Shown: one piece after another, positions 3,969 to 61,565 of the stretch
How the letters are laid out: the number at the start of each line of letters is the position of its first letter
How positions within the stretch are numbered: the stretch's first letter is position 1
Source: Scyliorhinus canicula
Taxonomy: Eukaryota
Direction: 5' to 3'
Assembly (NCBI RefSeq): GCF_902713615.1
Contig: NC_052158.1
Location: forward strand, 14,876,546-14,940,545
Length of the DNA stretch: 64,000 bases
Notes under the pieces: generated by a model
Databases searched by the model: none
Told to the model about the DNA's origin: nothing
Seen by the model: the letters and a program-made list of their open reading frames with translations, nothing else
Translations under genes and position numbers: made by a program

Positions 3969-4108
3969 TTAGGACGCGGAGATGCCTGCGCTGTGGGGAG
4001 GGACCGTCATCGGAGGCAGAAACATGGACTTGAGCTTGGCGGACATGGCCGCTATCTCGGGGTCCTGTCCTTCGTAGGTCTTGATGATTCTCGCAAACTT
4101 CAGCACAC
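3969..4108 (-). CDS. C12orf57: C12orf57 coding exon 3: (G)VLKFARIIKTYEGQDPEIAAMSAKLKSMFLPPMTVPPHSAGISAS*
   Basis: Matches the C10 C-terminus (GVLKFARL.K.YE.QDPEIA...KLK..FLPPMT.PPH). Acceptor ttcaaag. Total CDS 64+177+140=381 nt = 126 aa plus stop. Confidence 0.95.
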
Positions 4109-5304
4109 CTTTGAATGACAAAAAGGAGAAACGGGAAAATAAGCGTCGATGCTCAAAGAGACATGGGGGCAACATGTGCAAGGAACTCAGAAAGCTGGCA
4201 TGCATGCACAGCAGACCATTAGGAAGGCAATAGAATTTGCAGTGCAGAAAGAGGCCATTCAGCCCATCAAGTCTGCACCAGCCCTTGGAAAGAGCACTCT
4301 ACTTGAGCCCACACCTTCACCCTATCCCCTTAAACCACCTAATCTTTTTGGACACTGAGGGCAATTTAGCTTGGCCAATCCACCTAACCTGCACATCTTT
4401 GGACTGTGGGAGGAAACCGGAGCACCCGGAGGAAACCCACGCAGACACAGGGAGAACGTGTAGACTCCGCACAGACAGTGACCCAAGCCAGGAATCGAAC
4501 CTGGGTCCCTGCAGTTGTGAAGTAACTGTGCTAACCACTGTGCTGCAGTGCCGCCAATGTTGGTCTTTAGTGCGAAGGGGTTGGAGCAGACGAATAAGGA
4601 AGGCTTGTCGCGAGTGTACAGGGGTTCGATGAGATCACACCTGGACTGCAGGGTGTAGTCTCGGTCTCCAGATTTAAGGATCTACTTGCATGGGGGGGGG
4701 TGATACAGCTGAGGTTTGGAACTCACTACCCCAGAGTGTTGTGAGTGCTCCACCGTTGAATATATTTAAGGCTGGGACAGGCAGATATTTGCTCTCTCAG
4801 GGAATCAAGGGGAGCGGGCGGCAAATGACATCCAGGCCGAAGATCAGCCACCATCATATTGAATGGCAGAGCAGGCTCCATGGGCCTACTCCTGTTATGT
4901 TCTTACCCAGCCCTTAGTAACACACTTGTGTCTTACACCCCGAGGCTCAACAGCCTGAAGTGCGTGTGCTTCAGGCGGGTCTGGTTCCTCACCGCGTCCT
5001 TAAAGGGTTAAATGAGGATCAGTTTGCACGGGTTCAGCTTGTGCTCCTTTGAGTTGGGGAGGGCGATTTCATCGTAGTTAAAAAGATCCCAAAGGGTCGA
5101 TCAAGAGAAATAATTTCCTCTGACGAGGAGAGTCCTGAACAAGGGGGTAACCAGAGCTGGGGCAGTGTCAGGGGGCACCTCTTTACAAGAGTAACAGACA
5201 ATCACTGGAATGCTATGCTACGTAGTTCAGACAGTCCAATGGTGATTACTGATTTAGTTCCTCGGTTATTGAGTTTTACAACTTCATTACGAGAGGATCT
5301 AACC

Positions 5305-6510
5305 AGTCGTCGCCCCCTGACATTCAACGGCATCATCATCGCTCAATCCTGCACTCTCAAAATCCTGGGAGGGATGGGGGGGGGGGGGGGGGGTTTACCA
5401 TTGACCAGAAACTGAACCGGACTAGTCATATCAATACTTTGGCTACCAGAGCAGGTCAGAGGCCAGGAATCCTACGGCGAGTAACTCACTTCCCGACTCC
5501 CCAAAGCTTGTCCAGCATCTACAAGGTACCAGTCAGGAGTGAGATGGAATACTTTCCACTTGCCTGGATGAGTGCAGCTCCAACAACACTCAATAAGCTC
5601 GACACCATCCAGGACAAAGCAGCCCCGCTTGATTGCTACCCCTTCCACAAACATTCAATCCCTCCATCACTGACAAACTGTAGCAGCCGTGTGTAACATC
5701 TACAAGATGCACTGTAGGGACTCACCAAGGTTCCTAAGGCAGCACCTTCAACAACTGGGGAACAGGACTTCCACGACATGCCCAGGAACAGGAGGACCCC
5801 ACTTAGTCCCTTAAGCCTGTTTCGCTATTCAAGGAGATCATGGCTGATCTGTGCCACAGATCCATCCAACCACCCTCCCCCCCCACTCCCCCCCCCCCCC
5901 CCAGTCCCTATCGCTTCATACACTTACTCAGCAAAAAAGATCTTTTTGAACATTTCTGTTGCTCCCTTTTGCTCTCACAGCCTTTTGCTGCTGAGAAAGT
6001 TCCAGATTGTCCGTCACTCTTGTAAAGAGGTGCCTCCTGACACTGCCCCAGCTCTGGTTACCCCCCTTGTTCAGGACTCCCCTTGTCAGAGGGAATTATT
6101 TCTCTTGATCGACCCTTTGGGATCTTTTTAACAACGATTAAATCACCCTCCCCACGACTGCCACCATCTGGAAGGACAAGGGAACACCACCACCTGGAGG
6201 TTCCCTCCAAGTCACTCACCACCCTCATTTGAAATGAAATGAAAATCGCTTATTGTCCCAAGTAGGCTTCAATGAAGTTACCGTGAAAAGCCCCTAGTCC
6301 CCACATTCCGGCCCCTGTTCAGGGAGGCTGGTACGGGAACTTGGAAACATAGCAGCCATTCCTTCACTGTCGTTGGGTCAAAATGCTGAAGCTCCCTCTC
6401 TAACAGCACAGGGACTGCAGCGGTTCAATGCAGCCGCCCACCACCATCTTGTCAAGAGCAATTAGGGATGGGAAATAAACACTGGCTTAGCCACATCCTG
6501 CGAAAGAATT
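5305..6510 (+). mobile_element. CR1/L2-group LINE 3' fragment with nested insertions, in C12orf57 intron 2
   Basis: LSSIYKVPVRSEMEYFPLAW..KLDTIQDKAA thumb-domain motif. Related pieces at about 850-1420, 27970-28180 and 53130-53430. Confidence 0.7.
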
Positions 6511-7185
6511 TAAATAAATTTCTTTGACCGAGATGTTTCCACTCAAGCCTGAAGACTGGAACATGCCAAGAAATAGGTGGTTGGCTGCTGTTGCCCCACT
6601 TGGGTGACAGGGATTGGAGGTGATTGAAAACGTTCCCCGTCCCTGTCCTTACAATTCCACTAAAATTCATCTCATGGCTCACAACTGACAGTCCACCTAA
6701 AACCTACTATCAGTGCAACTCCTCGGTGGAACGCACCAGCTTAGAGGACAGATTTGGGTTGGGGGGGGGGGGGGGGGGGGGGGGGGGGCTGCGGCTCCAG
6801 TAGTGCAGCTCCTGCTGTGCTCCAGTGTGGAGCTTGGGGAATCAGTGGCGTGTTCTCGAGCGCAGGGAGTGGGTGGGCTCCAGCATCCCACAAGTCCCGA
6901 AAGACGCGCTGTTCGGTGAACTGGACATTCTGAATTCTCCCTCTGTGTACCTGAACAGGCACCGGAATGTGGCAACTAGGGGCTTTTCACAGTAACTTCA
7001 TTGCAGTGTTAATGTAAGCCTACTTGTGACAAAGATTATCATTTTGGGGGTAAGGGGGGTATGCTCCAGTGTGGGGAAGGGGATACCAGCATTGGGGTAA
7101 GTGGGTGGGTGCTCCAGTGTGGGGGAACAGTCTCCAGTGTGGTGGGGGCTCCAGTTAGATTCCAACACGCCACACTAACACTTGC

Positions 7186-7362
7186 CTTCTCCATCATTAC
7201 TGAAGCCGTACGATTTGATAACATCCTGCTGGATCTGGGTTGCCACAGGCAATATAAACTGCAGCATCTTGCCCATGTCGTTACAGGCGTTGTCCCGAGC
7301 CTCCTCCATTCTCATTGCATTATCGGGGGAAGCAAAGGCCTTGATCACTTCAGTTAAAACCA
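7186..7362 (-). CDS. C12orf57: C12orf57 coding exon 2: (V)VLTEVIKAFASPDNAMRMEEARDNACNDMGKMLQFILPVATQIQQDVIKSYGFSNDGE
   Basis: Nearly identical to the recognised C10 core (ARDNACNDMGKMLQF.LPVATQIQQ). Polypyrimidine acceptor ttcctcag. 177 nt, phase 1-1, donor G|gcaagt (GC). Confidence 0.95.
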
Positions 7363-7594
7363 CTGAGGAAAGGAGAGAGAGAGAGAAACAGTGTGAATAT
7401 CACAGAGAGAGAGAGAAAAATAAGAAAAGATGGATGGAAAAGCCACTGGACATCAACTGGACAACATAGAGTGTTCACATTCTTGGACAGAGTTGTCTCT
7501 AAAATTCCAAATTATAACTGAACGTCAAAACGAGACCAAACCCAAGGGCCAGCGTGGAGCCCAGATTCTGGACCATTCTCTCCATTACTGCCCT

Positions 7595-9140: not shown

Positions 9141-9146
9141 CTTCAC

Positions 9147-9210
9147 CTTTCGCCTGCTCCAGGCTCAGTCCGGCCGGCGGCTGTTGCTGCTGCTGTTGAG
9201 CCGCCGCCAT
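9147..9210 (-). CDS. C12orf57: C12orf57 (protein C10/GRCC10) coding exon 1: MAAAQQQQQQPPAGLSLEQAK, phase-1 end
   Basis: ATG at 9210-9208. The peptide resembles the human C10 N-terminus (..PAALSAEQAK). Donor AAAG|gtgaag, 64 nt, joins exon 2 in frame. Confidence 0.9.
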
Positions 9211-9289
9211 GTCACCGTCTTGGTGCCGGAGAGAAATCCAGCTCCAGGTCCCGGAGCAGCCCGGCCGCCTGGGCCGCAACTCGGAGCGA

Positions 9290-11335
9290 TAGAGGCCGGA
9301 GGAGCAGGCCCGGCAACAGCTCCACCCAGAGGCCGGAGGACCGCACCCGGGAACAGCTCCACCTAGAGGCTGGAGGAGCAGGCCCGGGAACAGCTCCACC
9401 CAGAGGCCGGAGGAGCAGGCCCGGGAACAGCTCCACCCAGAGGTCGGAGTACCGCGCCCGGGAACAGCGCCACCCAGAGGCCGGAGGCCCGCACCCGGGA
9501 ACAGCTCCACCCAGTGGCCGGAGGAGCAGGCCCGGGAACAGCTCCACCCAGAGGTCGGAGTACCGCGCCCGGGAACAGCGCCACCCAGAGGCCGGAGGCC
9601 CGCACCCGGGAACAGCTCCACCCAGAGGCCCGTACCTGGGAACAGCACCACCTAGATGCCGGAGGACCGCACCCGGGAACAGCTCCTCCCGCAGTCGGAG
9701 GACCAATCCCGCAACGAGGAGCCGAGCCGCCCGCAGGTCGGAGGACCGATCCCGCAGCCGCGAACAGCGCCACCATCAGGTCGGAGAACCGGCCCGTCAG
9801 CAGGGAATGGCGCCACCCGCAGGTCGGAGAACCGATCCGTTATCAGGGAACAGCGCCACCCGCAGTCAGAGGACCGATCCCGCAGCTGGGAACAGCGCCT
9901 CCCGCAGGTCGGAGGGACGATCCCGCAGCGGGGAGCAGCGCCGCCCACAGGTCGGAGGACCGATCCTGCAGTGGGGAACAGCGCCACCCGCAGTCGGAGG
10001 ACCGATACCGCAGCCGGAACAGCGCCACCCGCAGTCGCGGGACCGATACCGCAGCCACGAACAGCGCCACCCGCAGTCGGAGGAGCGAGCCCGCAGCCGG
10101 GAACAGCGCCACTCGCAGTCGGAGGACCGATCCCGTAGCCGGAACAGCGCCACCCGCGGGTCGGAGGACCGATCCGTCAGCGGGGAACAACGCCACCCGC
10201 GGGTCGGAGGAGCGATCCTGCAGCGGGGAGCAGCGCCACCCGCAGTCGGAGGACCGATCCCGTAGCCGGAACAGCGCCACCCGCGGGTCGGAGGACCGAT
10301 CCGTCAGAGGGGAACAGCGCCACCCGCAGTCGGAGGATCGATTCTGCAGCGGGGAACAGCGCCACCCGCAGTCGGAGGACCGATTCTGCAGCCGGGAACA
10401 GCGGCACCCGCAGTCGGAGGACCGATCCCGTAGCGGGAACAGCGCCGACCGCGAGTCGGAGGACCGATCTGTCAGCGGGGAACAGCGCCACCCGCGGGTC
10501 AGAGGAGCGATCCTGCAGCGGGGAGCAGCGCCGCCCACAGGTCGGTGGACCGATCCCGCAGCGGGGAACAGCGCCACCCGCACAGCGCCTCCCGCAGGTC
10601 GGAGGACCGCACCCGGGAACAGCACCACCCGGAGGACCACACCCGGGAACAGCACCACCCAGAGGCCGGCGGACCGCACCCAGGAACAGCTCCACCCAGA
10701 GGCTGGAGGAGCGGGCCCACACCCGGGAGCAGCTCCACCCAGAGGTCGGAGGCCCGCAACCGGGAACAACACCACCCAGAGGCCCGCACCCGGGAACAGC
10801 TCCACCCGGAGGCCGGCACCCGGGAGCAGCGCCACCCGCAGTCGGAGGACCGATCCCGCAGCCGGAACAGCGCCGCCCGCAGGTCGGAGGACCGAGCCCA
10901 CAGCCGCAAACAGCGCCGCCCGCAGGTCGGATGACCGATCCTGCAACAAGGAGCAGAGCCGCCCGCAGGTCGGAGGACTGATCCCGCATCCGCGAACAGC
11001 GCCACCATCAGGTCGGAGAACCGACCCGTCAGCAGGGAACCGCGCAGGTCGGAGGACCGAACCCGCAACCGCGAACAGCGCCACCATCAGGTCGGAGGGA
11101 CGATCCCGCAGCCGGGAACAGCGCCGCCCGCAGGTCGGGGGACCGATCCCGCAGCCGGGAACAGCGCCACCATCAGGTCGGAGGGACGATCCCGCAGCCG
11201 GGAACAGCGCCGCCCGCAGGTCGGTGGACCGATCCCGCAGCCTGGAACAGCGCCACCATCAGGTCGGAGGGACGATCCCGCAGCCGGGAACAGCGCCACC
11301 CGCAGGTCGGAGGGACGATCCCGTAGCGGGGAACG
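9290..11335. repeat. CpG-rich compound minisatellite (37-bp and 41-43-bp units, core gggaacagcgccacccgcagtcggaggacc) just upstream of the C12orf57 ATG
   Basis: Unit spacing 37 bp at 9351/9388 and 42 bp at 10021/10063/10105. Confidence 0.95.
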
Positions 11336-14446: not shown

Positions 14447-14457
14447 CTTAGAGACAT

Positions 14458-14631
14458 GGGGCTGGATTCTCCGCTTTCGTTGCGCAGACAGCAAACCCAC
14501 ACCCGGGAATTTCCCAAGGGCGGGGGGGCTTCCCACAATGGGAAACCCCATTGGCCGGCTGGCGAGAGGGAGAATCCCATCGGGGCACGCCGCACTAGAA
14601 AATGAGAGCGGCGGAATAGAGGATCCCACCC
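14458..14631. mobile_element. Short palindromic MITE (second copy about 18397-18583, partial near 56331)
   Basis: gggctggattctc..gaggatcccaccc termini and a shared core atgggaaaccccattggccg with the 18.4-kb copy. Confidence 0.62.
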
Positions 14632-15669: not shown

Positions 15670-15692
15670 CCTTGTTCCCATGTTTTGTTTTC

Positions 15693-16616: not shown

Positions 16617-17116
16617 AAAGTTTAAAATGTTCTACAAGCAGTCAAGTCAAACCACTGCTTCTGAAGGTCTACCGAGTCCTTGCATCAGACCAGTTGGATT
16701 GATTGCCGCATTCTGGGGCAGCGATTCTTAAGGGAATGCACCCCCCACCCCACCGATAAGAATGAACATGGGCACTTAAGACATAGGAAATGGAATGAAG
16801 AGGGTTGTTGCAGTACTGGGTCAGAAAATAAGCATTGTACATTTCATTCAACAAGGAAAACAAGTTTAGAAAAAAGGCCCAACAATAATAGTGCAAAGAG
16901 CAGGCCAACTTTTCCCATGAAGCCTTAGCGGATAATCATTACGGCAAAGTTGAAGATATTGGAGGCTTTGTGTTAAATCGGGTTGAAGAACCAAAATAAA
17001 ACATTTGCAACAAAGGCCCAAGGGTTTGATCTATCGTTGGCGTCTGTATTCCTGAGTGATGTCCTGGATTCTCGCCGGAGGAGGACGATGCTAGGTTGGA
17101 TCTTTGACCTGCGAGT

Positions 17117-17125
17117 TCATGGTTC
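17117..17125 (-). CDS. Ig receptor terminal exon coding part: EP*, followed by about 0.5 kb of 3' UTR
   Basis: Very strong acceptor tttctttttttttcag, phase 0 gives GAA CCA TGA. Followed by repeat-free sequence and an AATAAA at 16616-16611. Confidence 0.65.
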   Translation of the reverse strand, partial: EP

Positions 17126-18028: not shown

Positions 18029-18110
18029 CTCTCTGATATCTTTTTCCACCAAGTGAGGGACAATTCCTGGATCCAAAGCATTCTCCTCCTCTAAATCCTC
18101 CAACGGTTTC
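18029..18110 (-). CDS. Ig receptor exon 9, acidic cytoplasmic tail: (K)KPLEDLEEENALDPGIVPHLVEKDIRE
   Basis: Acceptor gtttgttaag, donor GAG|gtaggt, 82 nt. Phase-2 start matches the TM exon. Acidic like ALCAM and RAGE tails. Confidence 0.8.
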
Positions 18111-18607: not shown

Positions 18608-19875
18608 CAGTGCTGCACTATTGTACGATCAGTACTAAGGGAGAGCTGCACTGTCAGAGGGTCAGTACTGAGGGAGTGCTGCACTGTCAGAGGGTCAGTA
18701 CTGAGGGAGTGCTGCACTGTCAGAGGGTCAGTGCTGAGGGAGCGCTGCACTGTCAGAGGGTCAGTACTGTGGGAGTGCTGCACTGTCAGAGGGTCAGTAC
18801 TGAGGGAGTGCTGCACTGTCAGAGGGTCAGTTCTGTGGGAGTGCTGCACTGTCAGAGGGTCAGTACTGAGGGAGTGCTGCACTGTCAGAGGGTCAGTACT
18901 GAGGGAGCGCTGCACTGTCAGAGGGTCAGTACTGAGGGAGTGCTGCACTGTCAGAGGGTCAGTACTGAGGGAGTGCTGCACTATTGTACGATCAGTACTA
19001 AGGGAGAGCTGCACTGTCAGAGAGTCAGTACTGAGGGAGTGCTGCACTGTCAGACGGTCAGTACTGAGGGAGTGCTGCACTATTGTACGATCAGTACTAA
19101 GGGAGAGCTGCACTGTCAGAGGGTCAGTACTGAGGGAGTGCTGCACTGTCAGAGGGTCAGTACTGAGGGAGTGCTGCACTGTCAGAGGGTCAGTACTGTG
19201 GGAGTGCTGCACTGTCAGAGGATCAGTACCGAGGGAGTGCTGCACTGTCAGAGGGTCAGTACTGAGGGAGTGCTGCACTGTCAGAGGGTCAGTACTGTGG
19301 GAGTGCTGCACTGTCAGAGGGTCAGTACTGAGGAGTGCTGCACTGTCAGAGGGTCAGTACTGGTGGGAGTGCTGCACTGTCAGAGGGTTCAGTACTGGAG
19401 GGAGTGCTGCACTGTCAGAGGGTCAGTACTGAGGGAGTGCTGCACTGTCAGAGGGTCAGTACTGAGGGAGTGCTGCACTGTCAGAGGGTCAGTACTGAGG
19501 GAGTTCTGCACTGTCAGAGAGTCAGTACTGAGGGAGCACCGCACTGTCAGAGGGTCAGTACTGAGGGAGTGCTGCACTGTCAGAGGGTCAGTACTGAGGG
19601 AGTGCTGCACTGTCAGAGAGTCAGTACTGAGGGAGAGCTGCACTGTCAGAGGGTCAGTACTGAGGGAGTGCTGCACTGTCAGAGGGTCAGTACTGAGGGA
19701 ATGCTGAACTGTCAGAGTCAGTACTGAGGGAGTGCTGCACTGTCAGAGGGTCAGTACTGAGGGAGTGCTGCACTGTTAGCGGGTCAGCACTGAGGGAGTG
19801 CTGCACTGTCAGAGGGTCAGTACTGAGGGAGTGCTGCACTGTCAGAGGGTCAGTACTGAGGGAGAGCTGCACTGT
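18608..19875 (+). repeat. 33-bp minisatellite (cagtactgagggagtgctgcactgtcagagggt)n
   Basis: About 38 units. The 11-aa periodic ORFs are a by-product. Confidence 0.95.
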
Positions 19876-21871: not shown

Positions 21872-22001
21872 TTCTCTGTCTTCTTCCTGTGGTAGCACAT
21901 GTAGTATGCTATGGTAGTGGAGAAAGCCACCAACATTAACGTCACTATGATTCCAATAACCATGCCAGCCCTCTTCAGCGACTTGGACTTTCCATGATGA
22001 T
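21872..22001 (-). CDS. Ig receptor exon 8, transmembrane: (D)HHGKSKSLKRAGMVIGIIVTLMLVAFSTTIAYYMCYHRKKTE
   Basis: Translated by hand. About 24-aa hydrophobic segment followed by a basic stop-transfer sequence RKK. Acceptor ttgcttgcag, donor AA|gtgagt, 130 nt, phase 1-2. Confidence 0.92.
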
Positions 22002-24313
22002 CTGCAAGCAATAATATCGAGCTGTAACAGTACACCCATGGAGGAGGTCAGCGGGAAATAAACATACAGATAAAATTCTTTCCCTTGCCGTTAAATTACT
22101 CCATGGCCTCCCTTCCCGTACCAGCCTCCCCGAACAGGCGGCGGAATGTGGCGACTAGGGGCTTTTCACAGTAACTTCACTTGAAGCCTACTCGTGATAA
22201 TAAACGATTTTCATTTCATTTCTTCACGGGCCCTTTGACCTGCTTCAGTCTTAAACCCCGGAGGAACAGGATGAACTTGCCAGCCCCTTCCGGCTTGCAG
22301 GTAGGTTCACCCTCTCTGTTAAAATGGCAGAGGGGGGGAATGTCACGTGACTGCCTTAAACACTCGTCTGCCAATCTCACTCCGGTTGTAGAATTAACAC
22401 GTGGGTAAGATTGAATCAGACTGTGGGCATCCTCCTGACGGGTTTCATACCTGTGGAGTGGCTTTCTTCGGCGAACACTGAAATGAAAGTTAAGAAAGCA
22501 AAATGAGAAAATGTTGAGGCAAAATCGTTCCCCCCCCCCCCCCCCCCCCCCCCCCCCGCTCCCTCCCCGCATTTAGGAGCTGATTTACTTTAGTTCTTGA
22601 GTCGTTGGTGACACTCGGGCAGGGAATGCCACAGTGACCAGGGAATGTTTAACCCACTCTTCTTACCCCACTCTTACCAAAGAGTGCCAGCTGTGGCCTA
22701 GTGGATAGTACTGCCAGCTCTGAACCGACTCCAGTACATAACCTAGGCTGATACCCCACCGCTGAGAGGGAGTGCTGTCCCCACATGCTCTCTCGGGCAG
22801 GTGTAAGTGGTCCCATAGCACTATCTCGAGGGAGAGCAGGCGGGGTGGGGATGTTCGACCCTAAGCCCTGCCCAATATCTATCCCTTCACCAACCCCACT
22901 GAAGCACCATCTGTTCCATAATTAATTGCGGCTCGTGGGATCCTGCTGTGCACAAATTGGCTGTTGTTCAGCTTACACGGTAAAAGTGACTCCGCTTAAA
23001 AAAACAATCCGGCTGTAAAGTGCTTTGGCACTGCCTGGCATTGTGAAAGGGGTGTATAGAAATGCAAGCTCTGCAATTTTTTCCCCCCATTTAAGGTGCA
23101 ATTTAGCGTGGCCAATCCACCGACTCTGCACATCTTTCACGCAGACATGGGAAAAATGTGCAAACTCCACACGGACAGTGATGTGGGGCCGGGATCGAAC
23201 CCGGGTCCTTGCCGCCAAGAGACAGCAGTGCTAACCATTGCGCCACCATGCCACCCGTTCTGTTTTATTTATCCAGTGACTCTTTGTCTCCAGTTTGTCT
23301 GTCTCCAGAAGGAGCTGTCTATCGCAGGTACCTTTACCTCACTCAGTTAGTCGTTGCCTCCCATGCGAATGCCAGCAGGCTATTCGACTAGGTGGGCATC
23401 ATGGTCCAGCCCGACCTTGTCCTCAACCCCCACCCAATCTCACACATGCCAACATTCCAGCCAGAGTCACTTGCACAGGGAATCCTGGTCCTGAATCCCA
23501 CCACCGTTCCCAAATCCCTCCTCTCCTACAATGCAGAGGTGTTCTACTGCCTTATTCGTTCCTCAGCTCACGTTGCGGAAGTCTTACAGCATCTGACAGT
23601 AGGTTTCCACACTTGGGCCACAAGGGGTCTCAGTAAAGATGGTGTTGAATACCTTCAACCAAGCCATCAATAATGCCACTAGGATGTTGAACTAGGGTGC
23701 TCTTTCAGAGGGTCGGTGCAAATTCAATGGGCTGAATGGCCTCTTTCTGCACTGTAGAAATTCTATGATTCTATGACAGCAGGCAGAGGATGTCATGATC
23801 ACTCTATCTTTCAGCACTGTGTCCCCGCCTGGGCCCTGAAACACACTTGCAGCATGGGAATCACTAAATTTACACGCGTTCTGAGCGGAACTGATTTGAT
23901 TGCAACACCAACGGATTATTCCTCACTCAATGGCGGATCAAGCATCCAGCAGTTCTTCAATGAACATTAGATATGGGGAGGCATGGCGGCACATTGGTCA
24001 GCCCGGTTTGATTCTGACCTTGGAGTTGACTGTCTCAGTGGAGTTTGCACTTTCTCCCCGTGCCTGCGTGGGTTTCCTCCGGGTGCTCCGGTTTGCTCCC
24101 ACAGTCCAAAGATGTGCAGGTTAGGTGGATTGGCCATGCAAAATTGCCTCTTAGTATCCAACGGTTAGGTGGAGTTACGGGGCTAGAACGGGTGGGGTGG
24201 GGTGGGGTGGGGGGAGTGGTGGGCCTAGTTAGAGTGCACTTTCGAAGGGGCGGTGCAGACTCAATGGGCCGAATGGCCTTCTTCTGCACTGTAGGGATTC
24301 TATGATATCTTAC

Positions 24314-24349
24314 CTCCTGGTCCATTTAACTCATTGTTATCTTCTCTTG
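24314..24349 (-). CDS. Ig receptor exon 7, 36-nt stalk: (A)REDNNELNGPG
   Basis: Strong acceptor tttctttctgtattcctccag and donor GAG|gtaaga, symmetric phase 1-1, located between the last Ig exon and the TM exon. Confidence 0.8.
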
Positions 24350-26393: not shown

Positions 26394-26526
26394 CTCTCAC
26401 TTGAATGGCCACGCTAGCTGATTTGGCGTTGAAGTCGAAGTCAAAGACAGTGCACTGGTACTCTCCTTCGTCCTGCTTCGTCACCGCCTGCAGCGTGTAC
26501 TGGGCCGAGTCGCTGAACTGTATTCC
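26394..26526 (-). CDS. Ig receptor exon 6: GIQFSDSAQYTLQAVTKQDEGEYQCTVFDFDFNAKSASVAIQVR
   Basis: Canonical Ig motif L..V...D.G.Y.C. Acceptor tctcag, donor G|gtaggc, 133 nt, phase 0-1. Confidence 0.93.
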
Positions 26527-28925: not shown

Positions 28926-29053
28926 GTCTTTTTCCCACATATATTTTTCTGGTGGAAGGTTGGTGTCAGCAGTACAATTCAGGGTGATGGTGTCACCTTC
29001 TCGTATCACGTCGTTGAGTGGGCCCACTTCTATTGTAACGCCTTCTATTGGAT
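28926..29053 (-). CDS. Ig receptor exon 5: (Y)PIEGVTIEVGPLNDVIREGDTITLNCTADTNLPPEKYMWEKD
   Basis: Acceptor ttcccgtgtacag, donor GAC|gtaagt, 128 nt, phase 1-0. Resembles ALCAM YPTEQVTIQV..IKEGDNITLKC and ends W.KD like RAGE. Confidence 0.93.
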
Positions 29054-29589
29054 CTGTACACGGGAAAGAGGGAAAACAGATATTGCTTAGAAAGGAAGAT
29101 TTCCATTTGTGTAGCACCTTTCAGCACCTCAGGACACTCCCAAAAATGCTTGACTGCCAATGAAGTGCCTTTGAAGCATCGTCGCTGCTGTGATTATTAT
29201 AGGCATCAATTTATGCACAGGAAGATCCCACAAACAACAATGTGATCATCGCCAGAAAATCTGTTTTTCTTCTGTTTTGCTGGCATTTGTTGAGGGATAG
29301 CGAATGCCAGGGAGAACTACCCTGGAATGGTGGCCACGGATCTTAATGCCCACCTGGGAGGGTAGTCGGGTCCCCCGGTTTAACAACTCATCCAAAAGGT
29401 GGCACCTCTGACAATGCAATAGTCCCTCAGTCCTGCACTGGTAATGCTGGTCTGGGCTTTGCTCTCAAACCTCTGGAGTGGCACTTGAACCGGTGACCTT
29501 CTGGCTCGTCACACGGCAGGGCAGGTAGCATGGACCCTTTAAGGGGGCGACCTTTCCCGACCAGGTGACCCGCTCGGGAGTGCTTGAAC

Positions 29590-36275: not shown

Positions 36276-36452
36276 AATACACGTCAATCGTGATGGTATC
36301 AGATCTCTGCGCCTCATTTTGGGAAGGATAAAACACTTCACAAAAGAACCTGGCATTCATGTCATTCTTTCTTGCTGTATAATATAATGTTGACTCGATT
36401 GTGAGAAGCCTGGTATTTTGGTCCTTCGTGATATGATTTTGGATGTGCGTGT
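36276..36452 (-). CDS. Ig receptor exon 4: (D)THIQNHITKDQNTRLLTIESTLYYTARKNDMNARFFCEVFYPSQNEAQRSDTITIDVY
   Basis: Not in the ORF track, translated by hand. Acceptor atttctag, donor T|gtaagt, 177 nt, phase 1-1. D..A.F.C F-strand motif like MCAM/ALCAM D2. Confidence 0.92.
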
Positions 36453-41014: not shown

Positions 41015-41634
41015 AGAGCACTAACAAATCTCCCCCCCAGGATATTGGTGCCCCTCAGGTTCAGGTGTAGACCATCCTGTCTATAGAGGTCCCACCTTCC
41101 CCAGAAAGAGCCCCAGTTATCCAGAAATCTGAATCCCTCCCGCCTGCACCATCCCTGTAGCCACGTGTTTAATTGCTCTCTCTCCCTATTCCTCATCTCA
41201 CTATCACGTGGCACGGGCAACAACCCAGAGATAACAACTCTGTTTGTTCTCGCTCTGAGCTTCCATCCTAGCTCCCTAAAGGCCTGCCTGACATCCTTGT
41301 CCCCTTTCCTACCTATGTCGTTAGTGCCAATGTGGACTACGACTTGGGGCTGCTCCCCCTCCCCCTTAAGGACCCGGAAAACACGATCCGAGACATCACG
41401 TACCCTTGCACCTGGGAGGCAACATACCAAACGTGAGTCTCTCTCGCTCCCACAAAATCTCCTATCTGTGCCCCTGACTATTGAGTCCCCAATTACTAAT
41501 GTTCTACTCCTTTCCCCCCTTCCCTTCTGAGCAACAGGGACAGACTCCGTGCCAGAGGCCCGTACCCCATGGCTTACCCCTGGTAAGTCGTCCCCCCCAC
41601 AAGTATCCAAAACGGTATACTTGTTACTCAGGGA
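40996..41634 (-). pseudogene. CR1 ORF1 C-terminal SGNH/GDSL esterase domain
   Basis: Motifs VIGDSIVRG, CLPGARV, HIGTNDIG, DGLHLN. Confidence 0.9.
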
Positions 41635-51263: not shown

Positions 51264-51304
<41 letters not shown>

Positions 51305-52867: not shown

Positions 52868-52955
52868 CATTGCCATTCGGTTGTAGCACTTTCCCATTCT
52901 TGTACCAGGTAACATTGGGGATGGGATAGCTGTCCATCACGACACACTTTCCAAT
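52868..52955 (-). CDS. Ig receptor exon 3: IGKCVVMDSYPIPNVTWYKNGKVLQPNGN
   Basis: Acceptor tcttctctgcag, donor G|gtgaga, 88 nt, phase 0-1. Aligns with ALCAM LGDCISEDSYPDGNITWYRNGKVLHP (B-strand Cys, C-strand Trp). Confidence 0.93.
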
Positions 52956-54457: not shown

Positions 54458-54522
54458 CTCAGAACGTGTGTCAACAGTAATTGTCATGTAGTTTGCTGTC
54501 AACTCAGGTTTGGCTGGCCGCT
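54458..54522 (-). CDS. Ig receptor exon 2: (E)RPAKPELTANYMTITVDTRSE, start of first Ig domain
   Basis: Acceptor ttcattttcag, donor GAG|gtaatg, 65 nt, phase 1-0. P.KPE motif as in ALCAM KQPSKPEI and RAGE IPGKPEI. Confidence 0.88.
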
Positions 54523-54564
54523 CTGAAAATGAACATAGTTATGTTAGCTCTTGGCAGCACATAG

Positions 54565-54813
54565 TGTTAACATGTACGAGATGCTGTGGTATGAAGAGGC
54601 AAGAGTTCAGCTCCTTTTTCACCAACACACCTTTAATGGTTCAAACTCACTCTGCACAGGACTCTACAGATCATCACAAGCTCCAGAGTCCACCTGAAGC
54701 CCCTTTACATATCAGTGTCAATCATTGAACACTTAACATAAATGAGACAATCTTTGAACACTTAACATAAATGAGACAACTAATTGCAATGTCTCTTAAC
54801 CCATTACTTAACA
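54565..54813 (-). mobile_element. Short solo LTR
   Basis: tgttaa...ttaaca inverted termini, near-perfect 5-bp TSD catag/cacag. Confidence 0.6.
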
Positions 54814-56409
54814 CACAGTCTGTCACAGTTACCCATCATGCTTCCAATGTGTTATAGATAACAAAAAACTGATAGTAGATGCTATATCTGTCTGTCTATC
54901 TCATCTATCAATCTTTTATTCTATCAAACAACTGATTGATCAATCCATGAATTGATCATTGTATTAGCTGCTCTGTTTATTTGTCTGTCTATCTGCCCTT
55001 CTATCTATCTTATCTTTCAATTTATCACTCTATTAATCAAATTATTCATCTATCCATTAATTGGGGGCAGCACGGTGGCGCAGTGGTTAGCACTGAAGTC
55101 TCACGGCGCCGAGGTCCCAAGTTTGATCCTGACTCTGGGTCACTGTCCGTGTGGAATTTGCATATTCTTCCCATGTGTGTGTGTGGGTTTTACCCCCAAA
55201 ACCCAAAAGATGTGCAGGGTAGGTGGATTGGCCACGCTACATTGCCCCTTAATTGGAACAAATGAATTGGGTACTCTAAATTTCAAAAAAGATCTATCCA
55301 TCAATTGATCATTACACCAAATGGTTTGTTTATTCGTCTGTCCATCCGCCTACCATTCCGTCCATCTATCTATCTGCTGTAAGTTGCTTAGCCTAGCTTT
55401 GAAATGATTACTGAGATGTCGGTGTGTTCAACTGGCTCATTTTATACAACTGAACTATGTACAGCTGTCCATGATCAGGGGGCAGAATTCTAGGTTTTCC
55501 CCACTGGGTTTGCAAGTGAGGAGATGGAGGGGGGTGGGGGTGGGGAGATTGAACATTTCACAAGTAGATTTCTCGCTGGGTTGCCACCCACCTGAACCTC
55601 TCTGAAATCCTAGGCCCAGGTTGTCCCACCCATCCTTGCTGCAGTGGCCAAGTATTGACCACTTAACAACTGTGTCCTGCCCGGTCCCAGTTTTCAATCA
55701 TTGATCTCCCCGTGGAACCCATTGAGTCCGGGTTCCCCAGGTAGGGGGAGACGGAAGTCAAATACCTGGGGCTCGTTAGGAGCAACGGATAAAAGCAGGC
55801 CCAACTCAGGGCCTCGTGTAACAAGTCCTCCCAGCTAGGATTGCTACTGAGAGTGAGGGGCAGCATTACACAGACGATTGTAAATATGTAAATCAATCCT
55901 TCTTTGCTTACTGCAGCTTTCCTCTGAGTTATTAGAATATTCTGATCCCCAAACTCTAGGTTCCTTTTTAATAATCTAATAGTAAACATAATTGTTGTCA
56001 CAAGTAGGCTTACATTAACACTGCAATGAAGTTACTGTGAAAATCCCCCAGTTGCCATATTCTGGCACCTATTCGAGTACACAGAGGGAGAATTCAGAAT
56101 GTGCAAATTACCTAACAGCACGTCTTTCGGGACTTGTGGGAGGAAACCCACGCAGACATGGGGAGAACGTGCAGACTCTGCACAGACAATGGCCCAAGCC
56201 GGGAATCGAAACCAGGTACCTGGCGCTGTGAAGCAACAGTGCTAACTACTGTGCAACTGTACCACCATGGGATAATAAAGTTTAGAGGAAAAATGACAAT
56301 ATTTGTATGAATAAAACAGAGAAAGAGAGAGGGTGGGATTAACCGTTCCGCCAGCCGTGTTTTCCTGAGCGCCGCGTTCCTCGCCGGCAGCAGGATTCTC
56401 TGTTCCCGC

Positions 56410-56650
56410 TACAGAGATACGGTACAGAGATGTGCTACAGAGATATGGTACAGATACGGTACAGAGATGTGCCACAGAGATATGGTACAGATACGGCACA
56501 GAGGTACGGTACAGATACGACAGAGAGATGTGCTACTGAGATACGGTACAGATACGGTACAGAGATGTGCTACAGAGATATGGTACAGATATGTCACAGA
56601 GATACAGTACAGATACGGCACAGATATGGAACAGAGATTTGGTACAGCGG
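56410..56650. repeat. Low-complexity (acagagatacggt/acagagatgtgct) repeat
   Basis: Directly visible 11-13-bp units. Confidence 0.85.
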
Positions 56651-56762
56651 CACAGGTCACAGGTGACCATGAAGGGTAGGATCCTTGTAACATCCCAATA
56701 TGCTCACTGCTGCCCGTTAAGGAGGGAGTCCCGTTGTTCAGTGACATGGCTAACACTTAATT

Positions 56763-57410
56763 GACCTCCCAAGTGAATATCCCTCCTTTTTCGGGACAAT
56801 CCTCCAAAGTGACTATCCCTCCTTTCCCAGGATCCCTCCAAAGTGACAATCCATCCTTTCCCGGGATCCCTCCAAAGTGACAATCCATCCTTTCCCGGGA
56901 TCCCTCCAAAGTGACTATCCCTCCTTTCCCAGGATCCCTCCAAAGTGACTATCCATCCTTACCCGGGATCCCTCCAAAGTGACTATCCATCCTTTCCCGG
57001 GATCCCTCCAAAGTGACAATCCATCCTTTCCCAGGATCCCTCCAAAGTGGCTTTCCATCCTTTCCCGTGATCCCTCCAAAGTGACTATCCATCCTTTCCC
57101 AGGATCCCTCCAAAGTGACTATTTATCCTTTCCCAGGATCCCTCCAAAGTGACAATCCATCCTTTCCCGGGATCCCACCATAGTGACTATTCCTCCTTTC
57201 CCAGGATCCCTCCAAAGTGACTATCCATCCTTTCCCGGGATCCCTCCAAAGTGGCTTTCCATCCTTTCCCGGGATCCCACCATAGTGACTATCCATCCTT
57301 TCCCAGGATCCCTCCAAAGTGACTATCCATCCTTTCCCAGGATCCCTCCATAGTGACTATCCATCCTTACCCGGGATCCCTCCAAAGTGACAATTCTTCC
57401 TTTCCCGGGG
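56763..57410. repeat. 34-bp minisatellite (ggatccctccaaagtgactatccatcctttcccg)n
   Basis: Spacing 34 bp (56831/56865), about 19 units. Confidence 0.95.
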
Positions 57411-58191
57411 TAACCAAGGGACAGATAGTCTCGCCAGCTCTGCCCATAATCCCAGGAATGAAAAACTCGAGGTGTTTGGATGAGGGGAAGGCGGAGGAGA
57501 GTCAGAGCGAGACAGTGAAACCCTGGGCATGCAGGTCACATTCCTGCTGTCAGCAACTCTCCCAGCCAGGGCTGACTCAAAAGGAGCAGTGGAAACTTTC
57601 CAGACTGTTTGTGAAGTGTTTCTCTCTGCGGTGCATGTGGGCTGCTGGTGGGAGATATCAGCGCGCAATCTGTGCCTTGGCGTGAGCTTTCCTTTCTTCC
57701 AATTCCTCCTGCAGGCTGATGGCAGCAGATTGTGCCTGACTCACGGTCAGTCATAACAGGCCTGTCTGCCTCTGGGTGACAACAGGCGCCATCCCAGACC
57801 CGCTTGGCTGTGGGAGGGTGAGGTGCGGCAATTGTGTTTGTTTTACACCGACTGATTCCCATCTCACTGCCATCTACTGATCTGGTTATCTGCGAATAAC
57901 TTGCACAGAAAGGATCCTCCTCCGCCTGCAACCCAACAAGGGCTGAATTCAGGGGGTTGGGCACTCACTTCACAGCCACGGCTTCAGGTTTCACCCAGGC
58001 AAGCCAGCACAGGTTGGTTCTTTCCTGTAGTGCAAGAGAAGCAGCAGCCGATTCGCACACTGGAGGCTCCTGTGTAGAGCAGCATTTCATTAACTGGACA
58101 ATGGGATTATGACCGAGACAGGCAAAATTCCCCCGCTCTCCCGGGAATCACACAGTGTCCCCGCCCCCCACACAGGCACACCCCTTATTGC

Positions 58192-60680
58192 CCCTCTGAC
58201 AGAGCAGCACTCCCACAGTACTGACCCTCTGACAGTGCAGCTCTCCCTCAGTACTGACCCACTGACATTGCAGCACTCCCTCAGTACTGACCCTCTGACA
58301 GTGCAGCACTCCCTCAGTACTGACCCTCTGACAGTGCAGCACTCCCTCAGTACTGACCCTCTGACATTGCAGCACTCCCTCAGTACTGACCCTCTGACAG
58401 TGCAGCACTCCCTCAGTACTGACCCTCTGACAGTGCAGCTCTCCCTCAGTACTGACCCTCTGACAGTGCAGCACTCCCTCAGTACTGACCCTCTGACAGT
58501 GCAGCACTCCCTCAGTACTGACCCTCTGACATTGCAGCACTCCCTCAGTACTGACCCTCTGACAGTGCAGCTCTCCCTCAGTACTGACCCTCTGACAGTG
58601 CAGCTCTCCCTCAGTACTGACCCTCTGACAGTGCAGCTCTCCCTCAGTACTGACCCTCTGACAGTGCAGCACTCCCTCAGTACTGACCCTCTGACAGTGC
58701 AGCACTCCCTCAGTGCTGACCCTCTGACAGTGCAGCACTCCCTCAGTACTGACCCTCTGACAGTGCAGCACTCCCTCAGTACTGACCCTCTGACAGTGCA
58801 GCACTCCCTCAGTGCTGACCCTCTGACAGTGCAGCACTCCCTCAGTGCTGACCCTCTGACAGTGCAGCTCTCCCTCAGTACTGACCCTCTGACAGTGCAG
58901 CACTCCCTCTGTACTGACCCTCTGACAGTGCAACACTCCCTCAGTACTGACCCTCTGACTCTGCAGCTCTCCCTCAGTACTGACCCTCTGACTGTGCAGC
59001 GCTCCCTCAGTTCTGACCCTCTGACAGTGCAGCACTCCCTCAGTACTGACCCTCTGACAGTGCAGCACTCCCTTAGTACTGACCCTCTAACAGTCCAGCA
59101 CTCCCCCAGTACTGACCCTCTGACAGTGCAGCACTCCCTCAGTGCTGACCCTCTGACAGTGCAGCACTTACTGATCCCCTGACAGTGCAGCACTCCCCCA
59201 GCCCTGACACTGAAAGTCCAGCAGTCCTTCAGCATTGAACCCTTGACAGTGTGGCACTCCCTGTACTGCCCCTCCGACAGTGCAGCTCTCCCTCAGTACT
59301 GATCCTCTGACAGTGCGGCACTGCCTATGTACTGACCCTCTGACAGTGCAGCACTCCCTCAGTACTGACCCTCTGACAGTGCAGCATTCCCTTAGTACTG
59401 ACTTTCTGACGGTGCAGAACTCCCTCAGTACTGACCCTCTGACAGTGCAGCACTCCCCCAGTACTGACCCTCTGACAGTGCAGCACTCCCTCAGTGCTGA
59501 CCCTCTGACAGTGCAGCACTCCCTCAGTACTGATCCCCTGACAGTGCAGCACTCCCCCAGCCCTGACACTCTGAAAGTCCAGCAGTCCTTCAGCATTGAA
59601 CCCCTGACAGTGTGGCACTCCCTGTACTGCCCCTCCGACAGTGCAGCTCTCCCTCAGTACTGACCCTCTGACAGTGAAGCACTCCCTCAGTGCTTACCCT
59701 CTGACAGTGCAGCACTCCCTCAGTACTGATCCCCTGACAGTACAGCACTCCCCCAGCCCTGACACTCTGAAAGTCCAGCAGTCCTTCAGCATTGAACCCC
59801 TGACAGTGTGGCACTCCCTGTACTGCCCCTCCGACAGTGCAGCTCTCCCTCAGTACTGACCCTCTGAGAGTGCAGCTCTCCCTCAGTACTGACCCTCTGA
59901 CGGTGCAGGACTCCCTCAGTACTGACCCTCTGACGGTGCAGGACTCCCTCAGTACTGACCCTCTGACGGTGCAGGACTCCCTCAGTACTGACCCTCTGAC
60001 AGTGCAACACTCCCTCAGTACTGACCCTCTGACTCTGCAGCTCTCCCTCAGTACTGACCCTCTGACTGTGCAGCGCTCCCTCAGTTCTGACCCTCTGACA
60101 GTGCAGCACTCCCTCAGTACTGACCCTCTGACAGTGCAACACTCCGTCAGTACTGACCCTCTGACAGTGCAGCGCTCCCTCAGTACTGACCCTCTGACAG
60201 TGCCGCACTCCCTCAGTACTGACCCTCTGACAGTGCCACACTCCCTCAGTACTGACCTTCTGACAGTGCGGCACTCCCTCAGTACTGTCCCTCTGACAGT
60301 GCAGCACTCCCTCAGTACTGACCCTCTGACAGCGCAGCGCTCCCTCAGTACTGACCCTCTGACAGTGCCGCACTCCCTCAGTACTGACCCTCTGACAGTG
60401 CCACACTCCCTCAGTACTGACCTTCTGACAGTGCCGCACTCCCTCAGTACTGACCCTCTGACAGTGCAGCATTCCCTCAGTACTGACCCTCTGACATTGC
60501 AGCATTCCCTCAGTACTGACCCATCTGACATTGCAGCATTCCCTCAGTACTGACCCATCTGACATTGCAGCACTCCCTCAGTACTGACCCTCTGACAGTG
60601 CAGCACTCCCTCAGTACTGACCCTCTGACATTGCAGTGCTCCCTCAGTACTGACCCTCTGACTGTGCAGTCCGCCCTCAC
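58192..60680 (-). repeat. Same 33-bp minisatellite in the opposite orientation, with a higher-order insert repeated three times
   Basis: About 70 units. Insert cagccctgacactctgaaagtccagcagtccttcagcattgaac at about 59199, 59558 and 59754. Confidence 0.95.
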
Positions 60681-60899
60681 TACTGCACGTTATTCCCCTC
60701 CAACGACACATTAGTTAAAAGGCTCTTTGCCATTTGGAATTCACACCTGTCAGGCAAATGATCTGAACCCAAATCCTGACAGCAATTGACAAGTTCGAGC
60801 ATAAAGCAATCTTGCTCTGAAAGGACTTTAAAAGAAACAATCCTGGGAGAGAGAGGTAGGGAACTCCGTACTCTAACCATGTCTGAAATCCTCACCCTC

Positions 60900-61410
60900 G
60901 TGATTAAAACCTAACTGTAACCAAATACGAAATCTTATCCCAATTTTGACCCTATCTTGAATCGTAGCCGTAACAATGACCATTAACTGAGTCCTAACCA
61001 CAGCCACAATGTAACCCTATTCCTAATTTCATCCCGTAACATGACCCAAACTCCAATCACAATTGAACACAGGCTCACACCCTATCGCGAACCCTAACCC
61101 GAAACACGAACCCTTACCCTATCCTAAACTGAACCATAACGCAAGCCTTACCAGTATCTCTAACCCTCTCCCTTACCCTCAGACTAAACAAACCTCTCAC
61201 CATAGCCAAGACCTGAACCCCATTCCCAACTCTAATCTTGTCCCCCAATTGGCCCCGAATCTTATTCCTAGCTCCAGCTATAACCCTAACCCTAATGCCA
61301 ACCTTAGCCTTAACCGTAACGTAGACATATCTCTATCCCTAACTCTAATTCCAGCCATGAACCTGAGTGATTCCTAACCCTCGCCCTGCTCCCAACCCCT
61401 ATCCCTGTAC
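60900..61410. repeat. Degenerate (CCCTAA)n-like hexamer repeat in intron 1 of the Ig gene
   Basis: Recurrent ccctaa/cctaac/ccttaa/ccgtaa hexamers. Confidence 0.65.
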
Positions 61411-61495
61411 ATGACCCTGAATCCTCGGAGCTTAGGAACTCCAGGATAAATAAGATCAACTTTGCTGTGAGGAAGGATGAAGTGGGAGTACTTAC

Positions 61496-61565
61496 CATGC
61501 GGGGAGACAACGTGAGCATAAGCTGAGAGAAGGAGTGCACAGGTCAGAGCAGAAGCTATGGCCAT
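61496..61565 (-). CDS. ALCAM/MCAM/BCAM/AGER-family Ig receptor exon 1, signal peptide MAIASALTCALLLSAYAHVVSPH
   Basis: Good Kozak context (agcATGG), hydrophobic leader, 70 nt ending in phase 1 at a strong donor G|gtaagt, the typical IgSF leader exon. Confidence 0.8.

What the first reader, a model, noticed from the sequence alone, without database searches (positions are those of the whole stretch)
3969..61565. ALCAM/RAGE-family gene directly upstream of C12orf57: possible missing paralogue
Seen: both genes are in tandem on the minus strand, about 8 kb apart. Established: human C12orf57 lies at 12p13.31 between ATN1 and PTPN6, near CD4/LAG3, and no ALCAM-family gene is there. ALCAM is at 3q13, MCAM at 11q23, BCAM at 19q13 and AGER in the MHC class III region. 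Inference: this may be a genome-duplication paralogue retained in cartilaginous fish and lost or relocated in mammals. That would bear on the origin of AGER and on proposed links between 12p13 and the MHC.
Basis: partly seen in the sequence, partly recalled or inferred. Interest (0 to 1): 0.7.

Follow-up and report, generated by a model that had tools for sequence, protein, structure and literature searches.

The report
RAGE-like gene in the catshark MHC
The two neighbouring genes are real and stay neighbours in many sharks and rays, but they lie inside the shark MHC and not in a 12p13-like region. The immunoglobulin gene is therefore most likely the shark counterpart of the mammalian receptor RAGE (AGER), which the literature says exists only in mammals.

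Summary
On the minus strand of this Scyliorhinus canicula window, an 11-exon ALCAM/RAGE-family gene (XP_038671907.1, "CD166 antigen-like", 61565-17117) ends 7.9 kb upstream of a three-exon C12orf57/grcc10 gene (9210-3969).

The tandem pair is not an assembly quirk. It is also found in white shark, horn shark, bamboo shark, sawfish and an electric ray. It is broken in skates and is not seen within 10 kb in stingrays.

Published gene tables (Verissimo 2023, supplement) place the pair in the elasmobranch MHC, in the order PHF1, grcc10, CD166-like, then RPS18 and C4, with PBX2/NOTCH4 on the other side. In reedfish, grcc10 also sits between DAXX and PHF1. In quail, as in human, it sits between ATN1 and PTPN6. 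So C12orf57 changed neighbourhood. The locus is 6p21-like, not 12p13-like.

Orthologues in other elasmobranchs are about 410 aa with V-C1-C2 domains, like RAGE. Their V domain matches only RAGE V among solved structures. Identity to ALCAM, MCAM, BCAM and AGER is 23-30% each, so this is no recent duplicate.

My best reading is an elasmobranch AGER counterpart, at about 0.6. I could build no tree. The scan had already noted this gene on this same window.

The parts
61496..61565 (-). Ig gene exon 1: ATG and signal peptide (MAIASALTCALLLSAYAHVVSPH)
   Evidence: Exact match to P0055 residues 1-23. Splice-aware mapping with a GT donor.
54458..54522 (-). Ig gene exon 2: start of the first Ig domain, equivalent to ALCAM D2 / RAGE C1
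   Evidence: In orthologues the V-domain exons lie between exon 1 and this exon. tblastn found none in the window.
52868..52955 (-). Ig gene exon 3: IGKCVVMDSYPIPNVTWYKNGKVLQPNGN
   Evidence: Best PDB hit is CD166 residues 153-180; RAGE residues 121-162 are also hit. Mapping.
36276..36452 (-). Ig gene exon 4: rest of the first Ig domain
   Evidence: 100% tblastn match to P0055 residues 75-133. Mapping.
28926..29053 (-). Ig gene exon 5: first half of the C2 domain (ALCAM D3 / RAGE C2 equivalent)
   Evidence: Matches PDB CD166 residues 243-283 at E 1e-7..
26394..26526 (-). Ig gene exon 6: second half of the C2 domain (DEGEYQC motif)
24314..24349 (-). Ig gene exon 7: stalk
22451..22477 (-). Ig gene exon 8: stalk (27 nt)
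21872..22001 (-). Ig gene exon 9: transmembrane helix and basic juxtamembrane stretch
   Evidence: In the model of the Mustelus orthologue, residues 358-389 form a helix. The letters running past the E10 end of an RNA contig are the reverse complement of the end of this exon.
18029..18110 (-). Ig gene exon 10: acidic cytoplasmic tail
   Evidence: Covered by RNA reads and by an RNA contig.
16740..17125 (-). Ig gene exon 11: last 2 codons, stop codon (CDS ends at 17117) and 3'UTR
   Evidence: The 18028/17124 junction is seen in two raw RNA runs and in one 1292-nt contig of depth 204. Coverage ends near 16740.
9147..9210 (-). C12orf57/grcc10 exon 1: MAAAQQQQQQPPAGLSLEQAK
   Evidence: The annotated P_C10 gene starts here.
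7186..7362 (-). C12orf57/grcc10 exon 2, with a GC donor (GC-AG intron)
   Evidence: It finds protein C10 of vertebrates at 80-89% identity.
3969..4108 (-). C12orf57/grcc10 exon 3 with the stop codon
7592..11334 (.). GC-rich minisatellites (units of 25/50, 37/111 and 43 bp). They cover C10 intron 1, its promoter and part of the intergenic gap. A 608-aa plus-strand gene model lies inside them.
   Evidence: That model has no Pfam hit and is probably an ORF made by the repeats.

Best explanation
The window is a piece of the catshark MHC region (chromosome NC_052158.1, about 14.88-14.94 Mb).

It carries a type I membrane protein of the ALCAM/MCAM/BCAM/RAGE family immediately upstream of grcc10 (C12orf57), which in turn lies upstream of PHF1. 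This three-gene order is ancestral for elasmobranchs.

In other sharks and rays the Ig gene encodes about 410 residues: signal peptide, V domain, C1-like domain, C2 domain, short stalk, one transmembrane helix and a short acidic tail. This is the RAGE layout, not the five-domain ALCAM layout. I take it to be the elasmobranch counterpart, and most likely the orthologue, of AGER. If so, RAGE would be an old MHC-resident gene of jawed vertebrates and not a mammalian invention.

In the two Scyliorhinus species the V-domain exons are missing, so the catshark protein (314 aa) has only the C1-like and C2 domains. It is transcribed and spliced.

What is shown: gene structure, family, expression, adjacency and MHC position.

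What is inferred: orthology to AGER; function as an adhesion or pattern-recognition receptor; and that C12orf57 reached ATN1-PTPN6 later, either by moving or by differential loss of duplicates.
For: Structure and species.

Family:
- The profile of 13 elasmobranch proteins scores 225 bits against CD166, 150 against RAGE V-C1-C2 and 69 against BCAM D1-D2.
- The protein atlas lists BCAM, ALCAM, MCAM and AGER clusters, all at 0.97-0.98.

RAGE layout:
- Orthologues are 407-446 aa, with V-set, C2-set_2/C1-set and Ig_3 domains.
- The Foldseek top three Swiss-Prot hits are mouse, rat and human AGER, aligned end to end.
- The V domain alone hits only RAGE V chains at E<=1e-4.
- In the V-domain profile search, RAGE V is the best whole-domain match. 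ALCAM and BCAM D1 are not among the 60 listed.

MHC position, from supplement file 1 of PMC10751288:
- Sawfish: FKBPL, CUTA, SYNGAP, ZBTB22, phf1, grcc10, CD166-like, then rps18, C4, MHC-Ib, BRD2, B2M and RXRB. PBX2/NOTCH4 lie 2 Mb to the other side.
- Catshark and white shark have the same core.
- The gene after C10 in the bamboo shark fused model has a Tudor domain that matches PHF1 best.

An AGER-like gene exists outside mammals: reedfish has one annotated between rnf5 and slc44a4. NCBI names the skate proteins AGER or AGER-like.

Expression.
Against: No phylogeny could be built, so orthology rests on position, architecture and domain similarity.

Domains 2 and 3 resemble human ALCAM more than human RAGE (80 vs 46 bits; exon hits). 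Fast evolution of mammalian AGER could explain this, but I did not show that.

In elasmobranchs the gene is not next to RNF5, PBX2 or SLC44A4. It lies 1.7-13 Mb from them in white shark.

No orthologue from chimaera or any bony vertebrate was recovered by my two searches. Those searches depend on shared words and may simply have missed them.

The names given by NCBI are automatic.
Confidence: 0.6

Rival explanations
1. It is a distinct, ancient fifth member of the ALCAM/MCAM/BCAM/AGER family that resides in the MHC. Cartilaginous fish retained it and bony vertebrates lost it. Mammalian AGER and the reedfish AGER-like gene next to RNF5 would then be a different gene.
For: In reedfish the AGER-like gene is at rnf5 (63.06 Mb), with no Ig gene between daxx and grcc10 (71.9 Mb). 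In sharks the gene is at grcc10 and not at rnf5. Identity to all four known members is about equal at 23-30%.
Against: The stored part of the gene tables names no second AGER-, CD166- or MUC18-like gene on the sawfish MHC chromosome. One gene moved by rearrangement within the MHC therefore explains both positions. The layout and the V domain are RAGE-like.
Confidence: 0.25
2. It is an elasmobranch-specific, shortened duplicate of ALCAM (or MCAM or BCAM) that landed in the MHC.
For: Human CD166 is the best single PDB match for the whole profile and for domains 2 and 3. NCBI calls most copies 'CD166 antigen-like'.
Against: Identity to CD166 of human, chicken and fishes is only 26-30%, no higher than expected between old paralogues. 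The gene is shared by sharks and rays. Its V domain does not match ALCAM D1 at the thresholds where it matches RAGE V.
Confidence: 0.08
3. One reading: the locus is the shark equivalent of human 12p13.31, and the Ig gene is a whole-genome-duplication paralogue that mammals lost from 12p13.
For: C12orf57 lies at 12p13.31 in human (established knowledge). It lies between Atrophin-1 and an SH2-phosphatase gene in quail.
Against: The shark neighbours are PHF1, ZBTB22, SYNGAP1, CUTA, FKBPL, RPS18 and C4, all of which are 6p21.3 genes in human. No ATN1 or PTPN6 lies next to grcc10 in the sawfish, catshark, white shark or reedfish tables.
Confidence: 0.05

Closest known systems
AGER / RAGE (human 6p21.32, MHC class III)
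   Same: It has three Ig domains (V, C1-like, C2), one transmembrane helix and a short acidic tail, about 410 aa in elasmobranch orthologues against 404 aa in human RAGE. It lies in the MHC. Its V domain is closest to RAGE V among solved structures. The Foldseek top hits are AGER, aligned end to end.
   Different: Identity is only 23-25%. The gene is next to grcc10 and PHF1, not next to RNF5 and PBX2. The catshark copy lacks the V domain that binds ligands in RAGE. No ligand data exist.
ALCAM / CD166 (human 3q13)
   Same: It gives the highest sequence scores overall and for domains 2 and 3 (225 bits; 80 bits). Identity is 28-30% over D1-D3.
   Different: ALCAM has five Ig domains and is not in the MHC. 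ALCAM D1 is not matched by the shark V domain at the thresholds used.
MCAM / MUC18 and BCAM / Lutheran
   Same: They belong to the same family. Identity is 25-27% over the first three domains. NCBI names the Hypanus copy and one Mobula isoform 'MUC18-like'.
   Different: They have five Ig domains and long cytoplasmic tails, and lie at 11q23 and 19q13. PDB scores are lower (BCAM D1-D2 69 bits).
C12orf57 / GRCC10 (protein C10)
   Same: It has three exons and 126 aa. Exon 2 is 80-89% identical to protein C10 of birds, reptiles, mammals, bichirs and rays. It carries the Pfam family P_C10.
   Different: In elasmobranchs and reedfish its neighbours are MHC genes (PHF1, DAXX). In quail and human they are ATN1 and PTPN6.

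Membership tests
ALCAM/MCAM/BCAM/RAGE group of Ig-superfamily receptors | Significant, colinear sequence similarity across consecutive Ig domains to family members, above other Ig proteins | tested here: met
   CD166 at 1.1e-65 and RAGE at 6.6e-43 are the two best PDB matches of the profile. In the Foldseek Swiss-Prot search, ranks 1-18 are only AGER, CD166, MUC18 and BCAM.
ALCAM/MCAM/BCAM/RAGE group of Ig-superfamily receptors | Type I membrane topology: signal peptide, Ig ectodomain, single transmembrane helix, cytoplasmic tail | tested here: met
   Signal-like N terminus, transmembrane exon 9, and a predicted helix at residues 358-389 of the Mustelus orthologue.
AGER / RAGE | Three-domain ectodomain V-C1-C2 (not five domains), total about 400 aa | tested here: met
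   Met in orthologues of 407-446 aa with V-set, C2-set_2/C1-set and Ig_3 domains. Not met by the catshark protein itself, which has two domains and no V.
AGER / RAGE | Location in the MHC region | tested here: met
   Gene tables for sawfish, catshark and white shark. The neighbour's Tudor domain matches PHF1 best.
AGER / RAGE | Immediate neighbours RNF5 and PBX2 | tested here: not met
   The neighbours are grcc10/phf1 on one side and TRIM-like or uncharacterised genes on the other. In white shark, rnf5 is at 114.2 Mb and PBX2 at 96.8 Mb, against the gene at 100.9 Mb.
AGER / RAGE | Groups with AGER in a phylogeny to the exclusion of ALCAM, MCAM and BCAM | not tested
Only similarity scores are available, and they are mixed.
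AGER / RAGE | Binds AGEs, HMGB1 and S100 proteins through the V-C1 unit | not testable with these tools
   This needs binding assays.
Protein C10 (C12orf57, Pfam P_C10) | About 125-aa protein matching PF14974 over its length | tested here: met
   A 126-aa product is assembled from three exons. The annotated gene has a P_C10 hit. All 182 candidates of the search were C10 proteins carrying PF14974.

The most novel reading that the evidence does not exclude
RAGE is not a mammalian invention. Its orthologue was already an MHC-resident gene in the common ancestor of jawed vertebrates and survives in sharks and rays beside grcc10 and PHF1, with the ligand-binding V domain lost in catsharks. C12orf57 was itself ancestrally MHC-linked and reached ATN1-PTPN6 (12p13) only on the line to amniotes. 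That would be a concrete single-gene link between 6p21 and 12p13.
Probability: 0.5. Interest if true: 0.7.

Novelty: new member of a known kind. Interest (0 to 1): 0.55.

Why it matters
The RAGE field still cites the claim that AGER exists only in mammals (PMC3903589, and later reviews found). A RAGE-layout gene inside the shark MHC, together with an annotated AGER-like gene beside RNF5 in reedfish, would move its origin back by more than 400 million years. It would also make RAGE part of the ancestral MHC gene set.

It would give non-mammalian models for RAGE function. The catshark copy would be a natural V-less form.

Separately, grcc10/C12orf57 is MHC-linked in cartilaginous fish and in a basal ray-finned fish, but sits between ATN1 and PTPN6 in amniotes. 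That makes it a clean marker for testing proposed exchanges between the MHC and 12p13.

None of this is stated in the papers I could search. The raw gene order is already in a published supplementary table and in NCBI annotation, so the novelty lies in the interpretation and not in the data.

Tried and rejected
- The whole-library representative search used one 52-aa exon. It found the window's own protein, but otherwise only large multi-Ig and CD22-like proteins.
- Two word-indexed homologue searches, one with P0055 and one with the 13-sequence profile, returned only elasmobranch proteins. I could therefore build no family tree and found no chimaera or bony-vertebrate orthologue.
- tblastn of six orthologous V domains against the window found nothing credible anywhere. 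That includes the 7-kb intron 1, which is full of 33- and 34-bp minisatellites.
- The Foldseek search of AFDB clusters added nothing beyond the Swiss-Prot search.
I laid the part beside it instead. As a result the exon 1 to exon 2 junction was not examined.
- The look-up for the Thamnophis C10 protein found no record.
- Stingray and reedfish C10 loci came back without DNA and with no neighbour within 10 kb.
- The main text of PMC10751288 does not mention PHF1, AGER, C12orf57 or CD166. Only its supplement does.
- I rejected the idea that the plus-strand 608-aa model at about 9209-11326 is a real gene. It lies wholly in GC-rich minisatellites and has no Pfam hit.
Full report
**What is in the window.** The window has no N runs and comes from Scyliorhinus canicula. 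An exon-sized query (window 28899-29054, minus strand) found a 314-aa protein at 100% identity in the representative library. That protein is XP_038671907.1, "CD166 antigen-like", on a 163-Mb chromosome.

tblastn and a splice-aware mapping place it on 11 minus-strand exons, all GT-AG:
- 61565-61496: signal peptide.
- 54522-54458, 52955-52868 and 36452-36276: first Ig domain.
- 29053-28926 and 26526-26394: second Ig domain.
- 24349-24314 and 22477-22451: stalk.
- 22001-21872: transmembrane helix.
- 18110-18029 and 17125-17117: acidic tail.

C12orf57/grcc10 lies downstream on the same strand. Its exons are 9210-9147, 7362-7186 (with a GC donor) and 4108-3969, giving 126 aa. The public annotation at the same place lists a 126-aa P_C10 gene.

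The gap from the Ig stop codon to the C10 ATG is 7.9 kb.

RNA evidence: two raw RNA runs and a 1292-nt transcript contig (depth 204) show the last Ig intron removed (18028/17124) and a 3' end near 16740. The letters that run past the contig's E10 end are the reverse complement of the end of exon 9.

**Family.**
- Single exons hit human CD166 best in the PDB, with RAGE also listed.
- A profile of 13 elasmobranch proteins (A1) scores 225 bits on CD166 D1-D3, 150 on RAGE V-C1-C2 and 69 on BCAM D1-D2. These are the family's solved members, and the first two lead the list.
- The protein atlas returns BCAM, ALCAM, MCAM and AGER clusters, all at 0.97-0.98.
- A structure model of the Mustelus orthologue has pLDDT of about 70-94 through the three Ig domains. 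Searched against Swiss-Prot models, ranks 1-18 are only AGER, CD166, MUC18 and BCAM.
- Identities are AGER 23-25%, CD166 26-30%, MUC18 27% and BCAM 25-26%.

Roughly equal, low identity to all four argues against a recent copy of any one of them.

**Architecture.** Orthologues exist in at least 15 elasmobranchs. Most are 407-446 aa and carry an extra N-terminal V-set domain, so the layout is V, C1-like, C2, transmembrane helix and short acidic tail. This is the RAGE layout, not the five-domain layout of ALCAM, MCAM and BCAM.

The three best Foldseek hits are mouse, rat and human AGER, aligned from the signal-peptide end to the tail.

By domain:
- The V domain alone matches only RAGE V chains at E<=1e-4.
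- In a V-domain profile search, RAGE V is the best whole-domain match. ALCAM and BCAM D1 are absent from the 60 listed.
- Domain 2 is closer to ALCAM D2 (80 bits) than to RAGE C1 (46 bits).

The sequence signal is thus mixed. The V domain and the layout point to RAGE. The inner domains point to the slowly evolving ALCAM.

NCBI's pipeline names the Amblyraja protein AGER and the Rhinoraja one AGER-like.

**The catshark copy lacks the V domain.** Exon 1 encodes the same signal peptide as the orthologues, and exon 2 starts at the V/C1 boundary. Six orthologous V domains find nothing in the window. Intron 1 carries 34-bp and 33-bp minisatellites. The independent S. torazame models also lack the V domain. 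I did not see the exon 1 to exon 2 junction in RNA.

**Is the adjacency conserved?** Yes, widely.
- Horn shark: a 423-aa Ig gene ends 4.8 kb upstream of C10 on the same strand.
- Electric ray Narcine: the gap is 2.3 kb.
- Bamboo shark: an old fused gene model runs from the Ig gene into C10 exon 2 and on into a Tudor domain.
- White shark and sawfish: the two genes are consecutive entries on the same strand in published gene tables.

The adjacency is broken in skates. In Amblyraja a TRIM gene follows the Ig gene, and tblastn with C10 exon 2 found no C10 sequence in that locus. In Rhinoraja two inverted C10 copies lie about 0.9 Mb from the Ig gene on the same chromosome. In stingrays no Ig gene lies within 10 kb of C10.

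**Where the locus is.** Supplement file 1 of Verissimo et al. 2023 (PMC10751288) lists whole MHC chromosomes.
- Sawfish: the order is FKBPL, CUTA, SYNGAP, ZBTB22, phf1, grcc10, "CD166 antigen-like". RPS18 follows 0.7 Mb on, and C4, MHC-Ib genes, BRD2, B2M, COL11A2 and RXRB lie beyond it. PBX2 and NOTCH4 lie 2 Mb to the other side.
- Catshark NC_052158.1: grcc10 is at 14,880,425-14,885,884. A plus-strand model comes next. LOC119975977 is at 14,893,137-14,938,248, which matches this window's gene in span and order. AIF1 and PRRC2 lie 0.8-1 Mb away, rps18 is 0.18 Mb away and notch4 is at 17.55 Mb.
- White shark: the core is the same.
- Bamboo shark: the Tudor domain after C10 matches PHF1 (90 bits) better than PHF19 (69) or MTF2 (65).
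- Reedfish: grcc10 lies between daxx and phf1, and an "AGER-like" gene lies between rnf5 and slc44a4 on the same chromosome.
- Quail: C10 lies between an Atrophin-1 family gene and an SH2-SH2-phosphatase gene. This is the human ATN1-C12orf57-PTPN6 order.

So the shark locus corresponds to human 6p21.3, where AGER lies. C12orf57 is the gene whose neighbourhood differs between fishes and amniotes.

**Best reading and rivals.**
- About 0.6: the gene is the elasmobranch counterpart of AGER. RAGE would then be an old MHC gene, contrary to the claim that it exists only in mammals (PMC3903589; still repeated).
- About 0.25: it is a separate old MHC-linked family member that bony vertebrates lost.
- About 0.08: it is an elasmobranch duplicate of ALCAM.

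The weak point is that I have no tree.

How C12orf57 reached 12p13 is open. It could have moved, or duplicate copies could have been lost reciprocally. The paper's linked MHCpara-9/12/14 scenario, with PHF19 at 9q33, makes reciprocal loss conceivable.

**Prior notes of the scan.** Two first-reader notes on this same window describe the gene as a compact RAGE-like receptor and note the missing V domain. Both agree with what I found.

Noticed in passing
window 54523-61495 (intron 1 of the Ig gene): The V-domain exons present in other elasmobranch orthologues are absent. The intron holds a 34-bp minisatellite (56765-57409) and a 33-bp one (58192-60685). The S. torazame models lack the V domain too, so the loss looks shared by the genus.
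   Followed up: partly
window 18629-19875 and 58192-60685: The same 33-bp minisatellite unit occurs in two introns of the gene in opposite orientation (38 and 76 copies). It creates long false ORFs on both strands.
   Followed up: no
window 9209-11326 (+): The public annotation has a 608-aa plus-strand gene with no Pfam hit. It lies wholly inside GC-rich minisatellites between the two genes and overlaps the C10 start. It is probably an artefact of the repeats.
   Followed up: partly
window 7184-7186: C12orf57 intron 2 has a GC donor (GC-AG intron).
   Followed up: no
window 36917-42884 (+) and 38389-41655 (-): Intron 3 of the Ig gene holds a LINE with endonuclease and reverse-transcriptase domains on the minus strand. 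It is inserted between long plus-strand ORFs that have no Pfam hit. My guess that these ORFs are a DNA transposase was not confirmed.
   Followed up: partly
L005 9989-10366 (Dermochelys coriacea CM019950.2): The leatherback turtle 'protein C10-like' is a single intronless ORF 7.5 kb from a PBX homeobox gene. It looks like a retrocopy. Its position beside a PBX gene, as AGER is beside PBX2 in human, may be chance.
   Followed up: partly
L003/L004 (Rhinoraja longicauda CM130181.1, 20.61-20.64 Mb): There are two identical 89-aa C10-like genes in inverted orientation about 8 kb apart. This is a skate-specific inverted duplication at the place where the Ig-C10 adjacency is broken.
   Followed up: no
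P0152 (S. torazame) and L001 55960-57379 (Amblyraja): TRIM genes (RING, B-box, PRY/SPRY) flank the Ig gene. One is fused upstream of it in an old cloudy catshark model and one lies 8.6 kb downstream in the skate. This fits the many TRIM39-like genes in the sawfish MHC table.
   Followed up: partly
supplement of PMC10751288, reedfish NC_041394.2 63.06-63.10 Mb: [quoted passage not shown] This is the position AGER holds beside RNF5 in human, and it conflicts with the published claim that AGER is confined to mammals.
   Followed up: no
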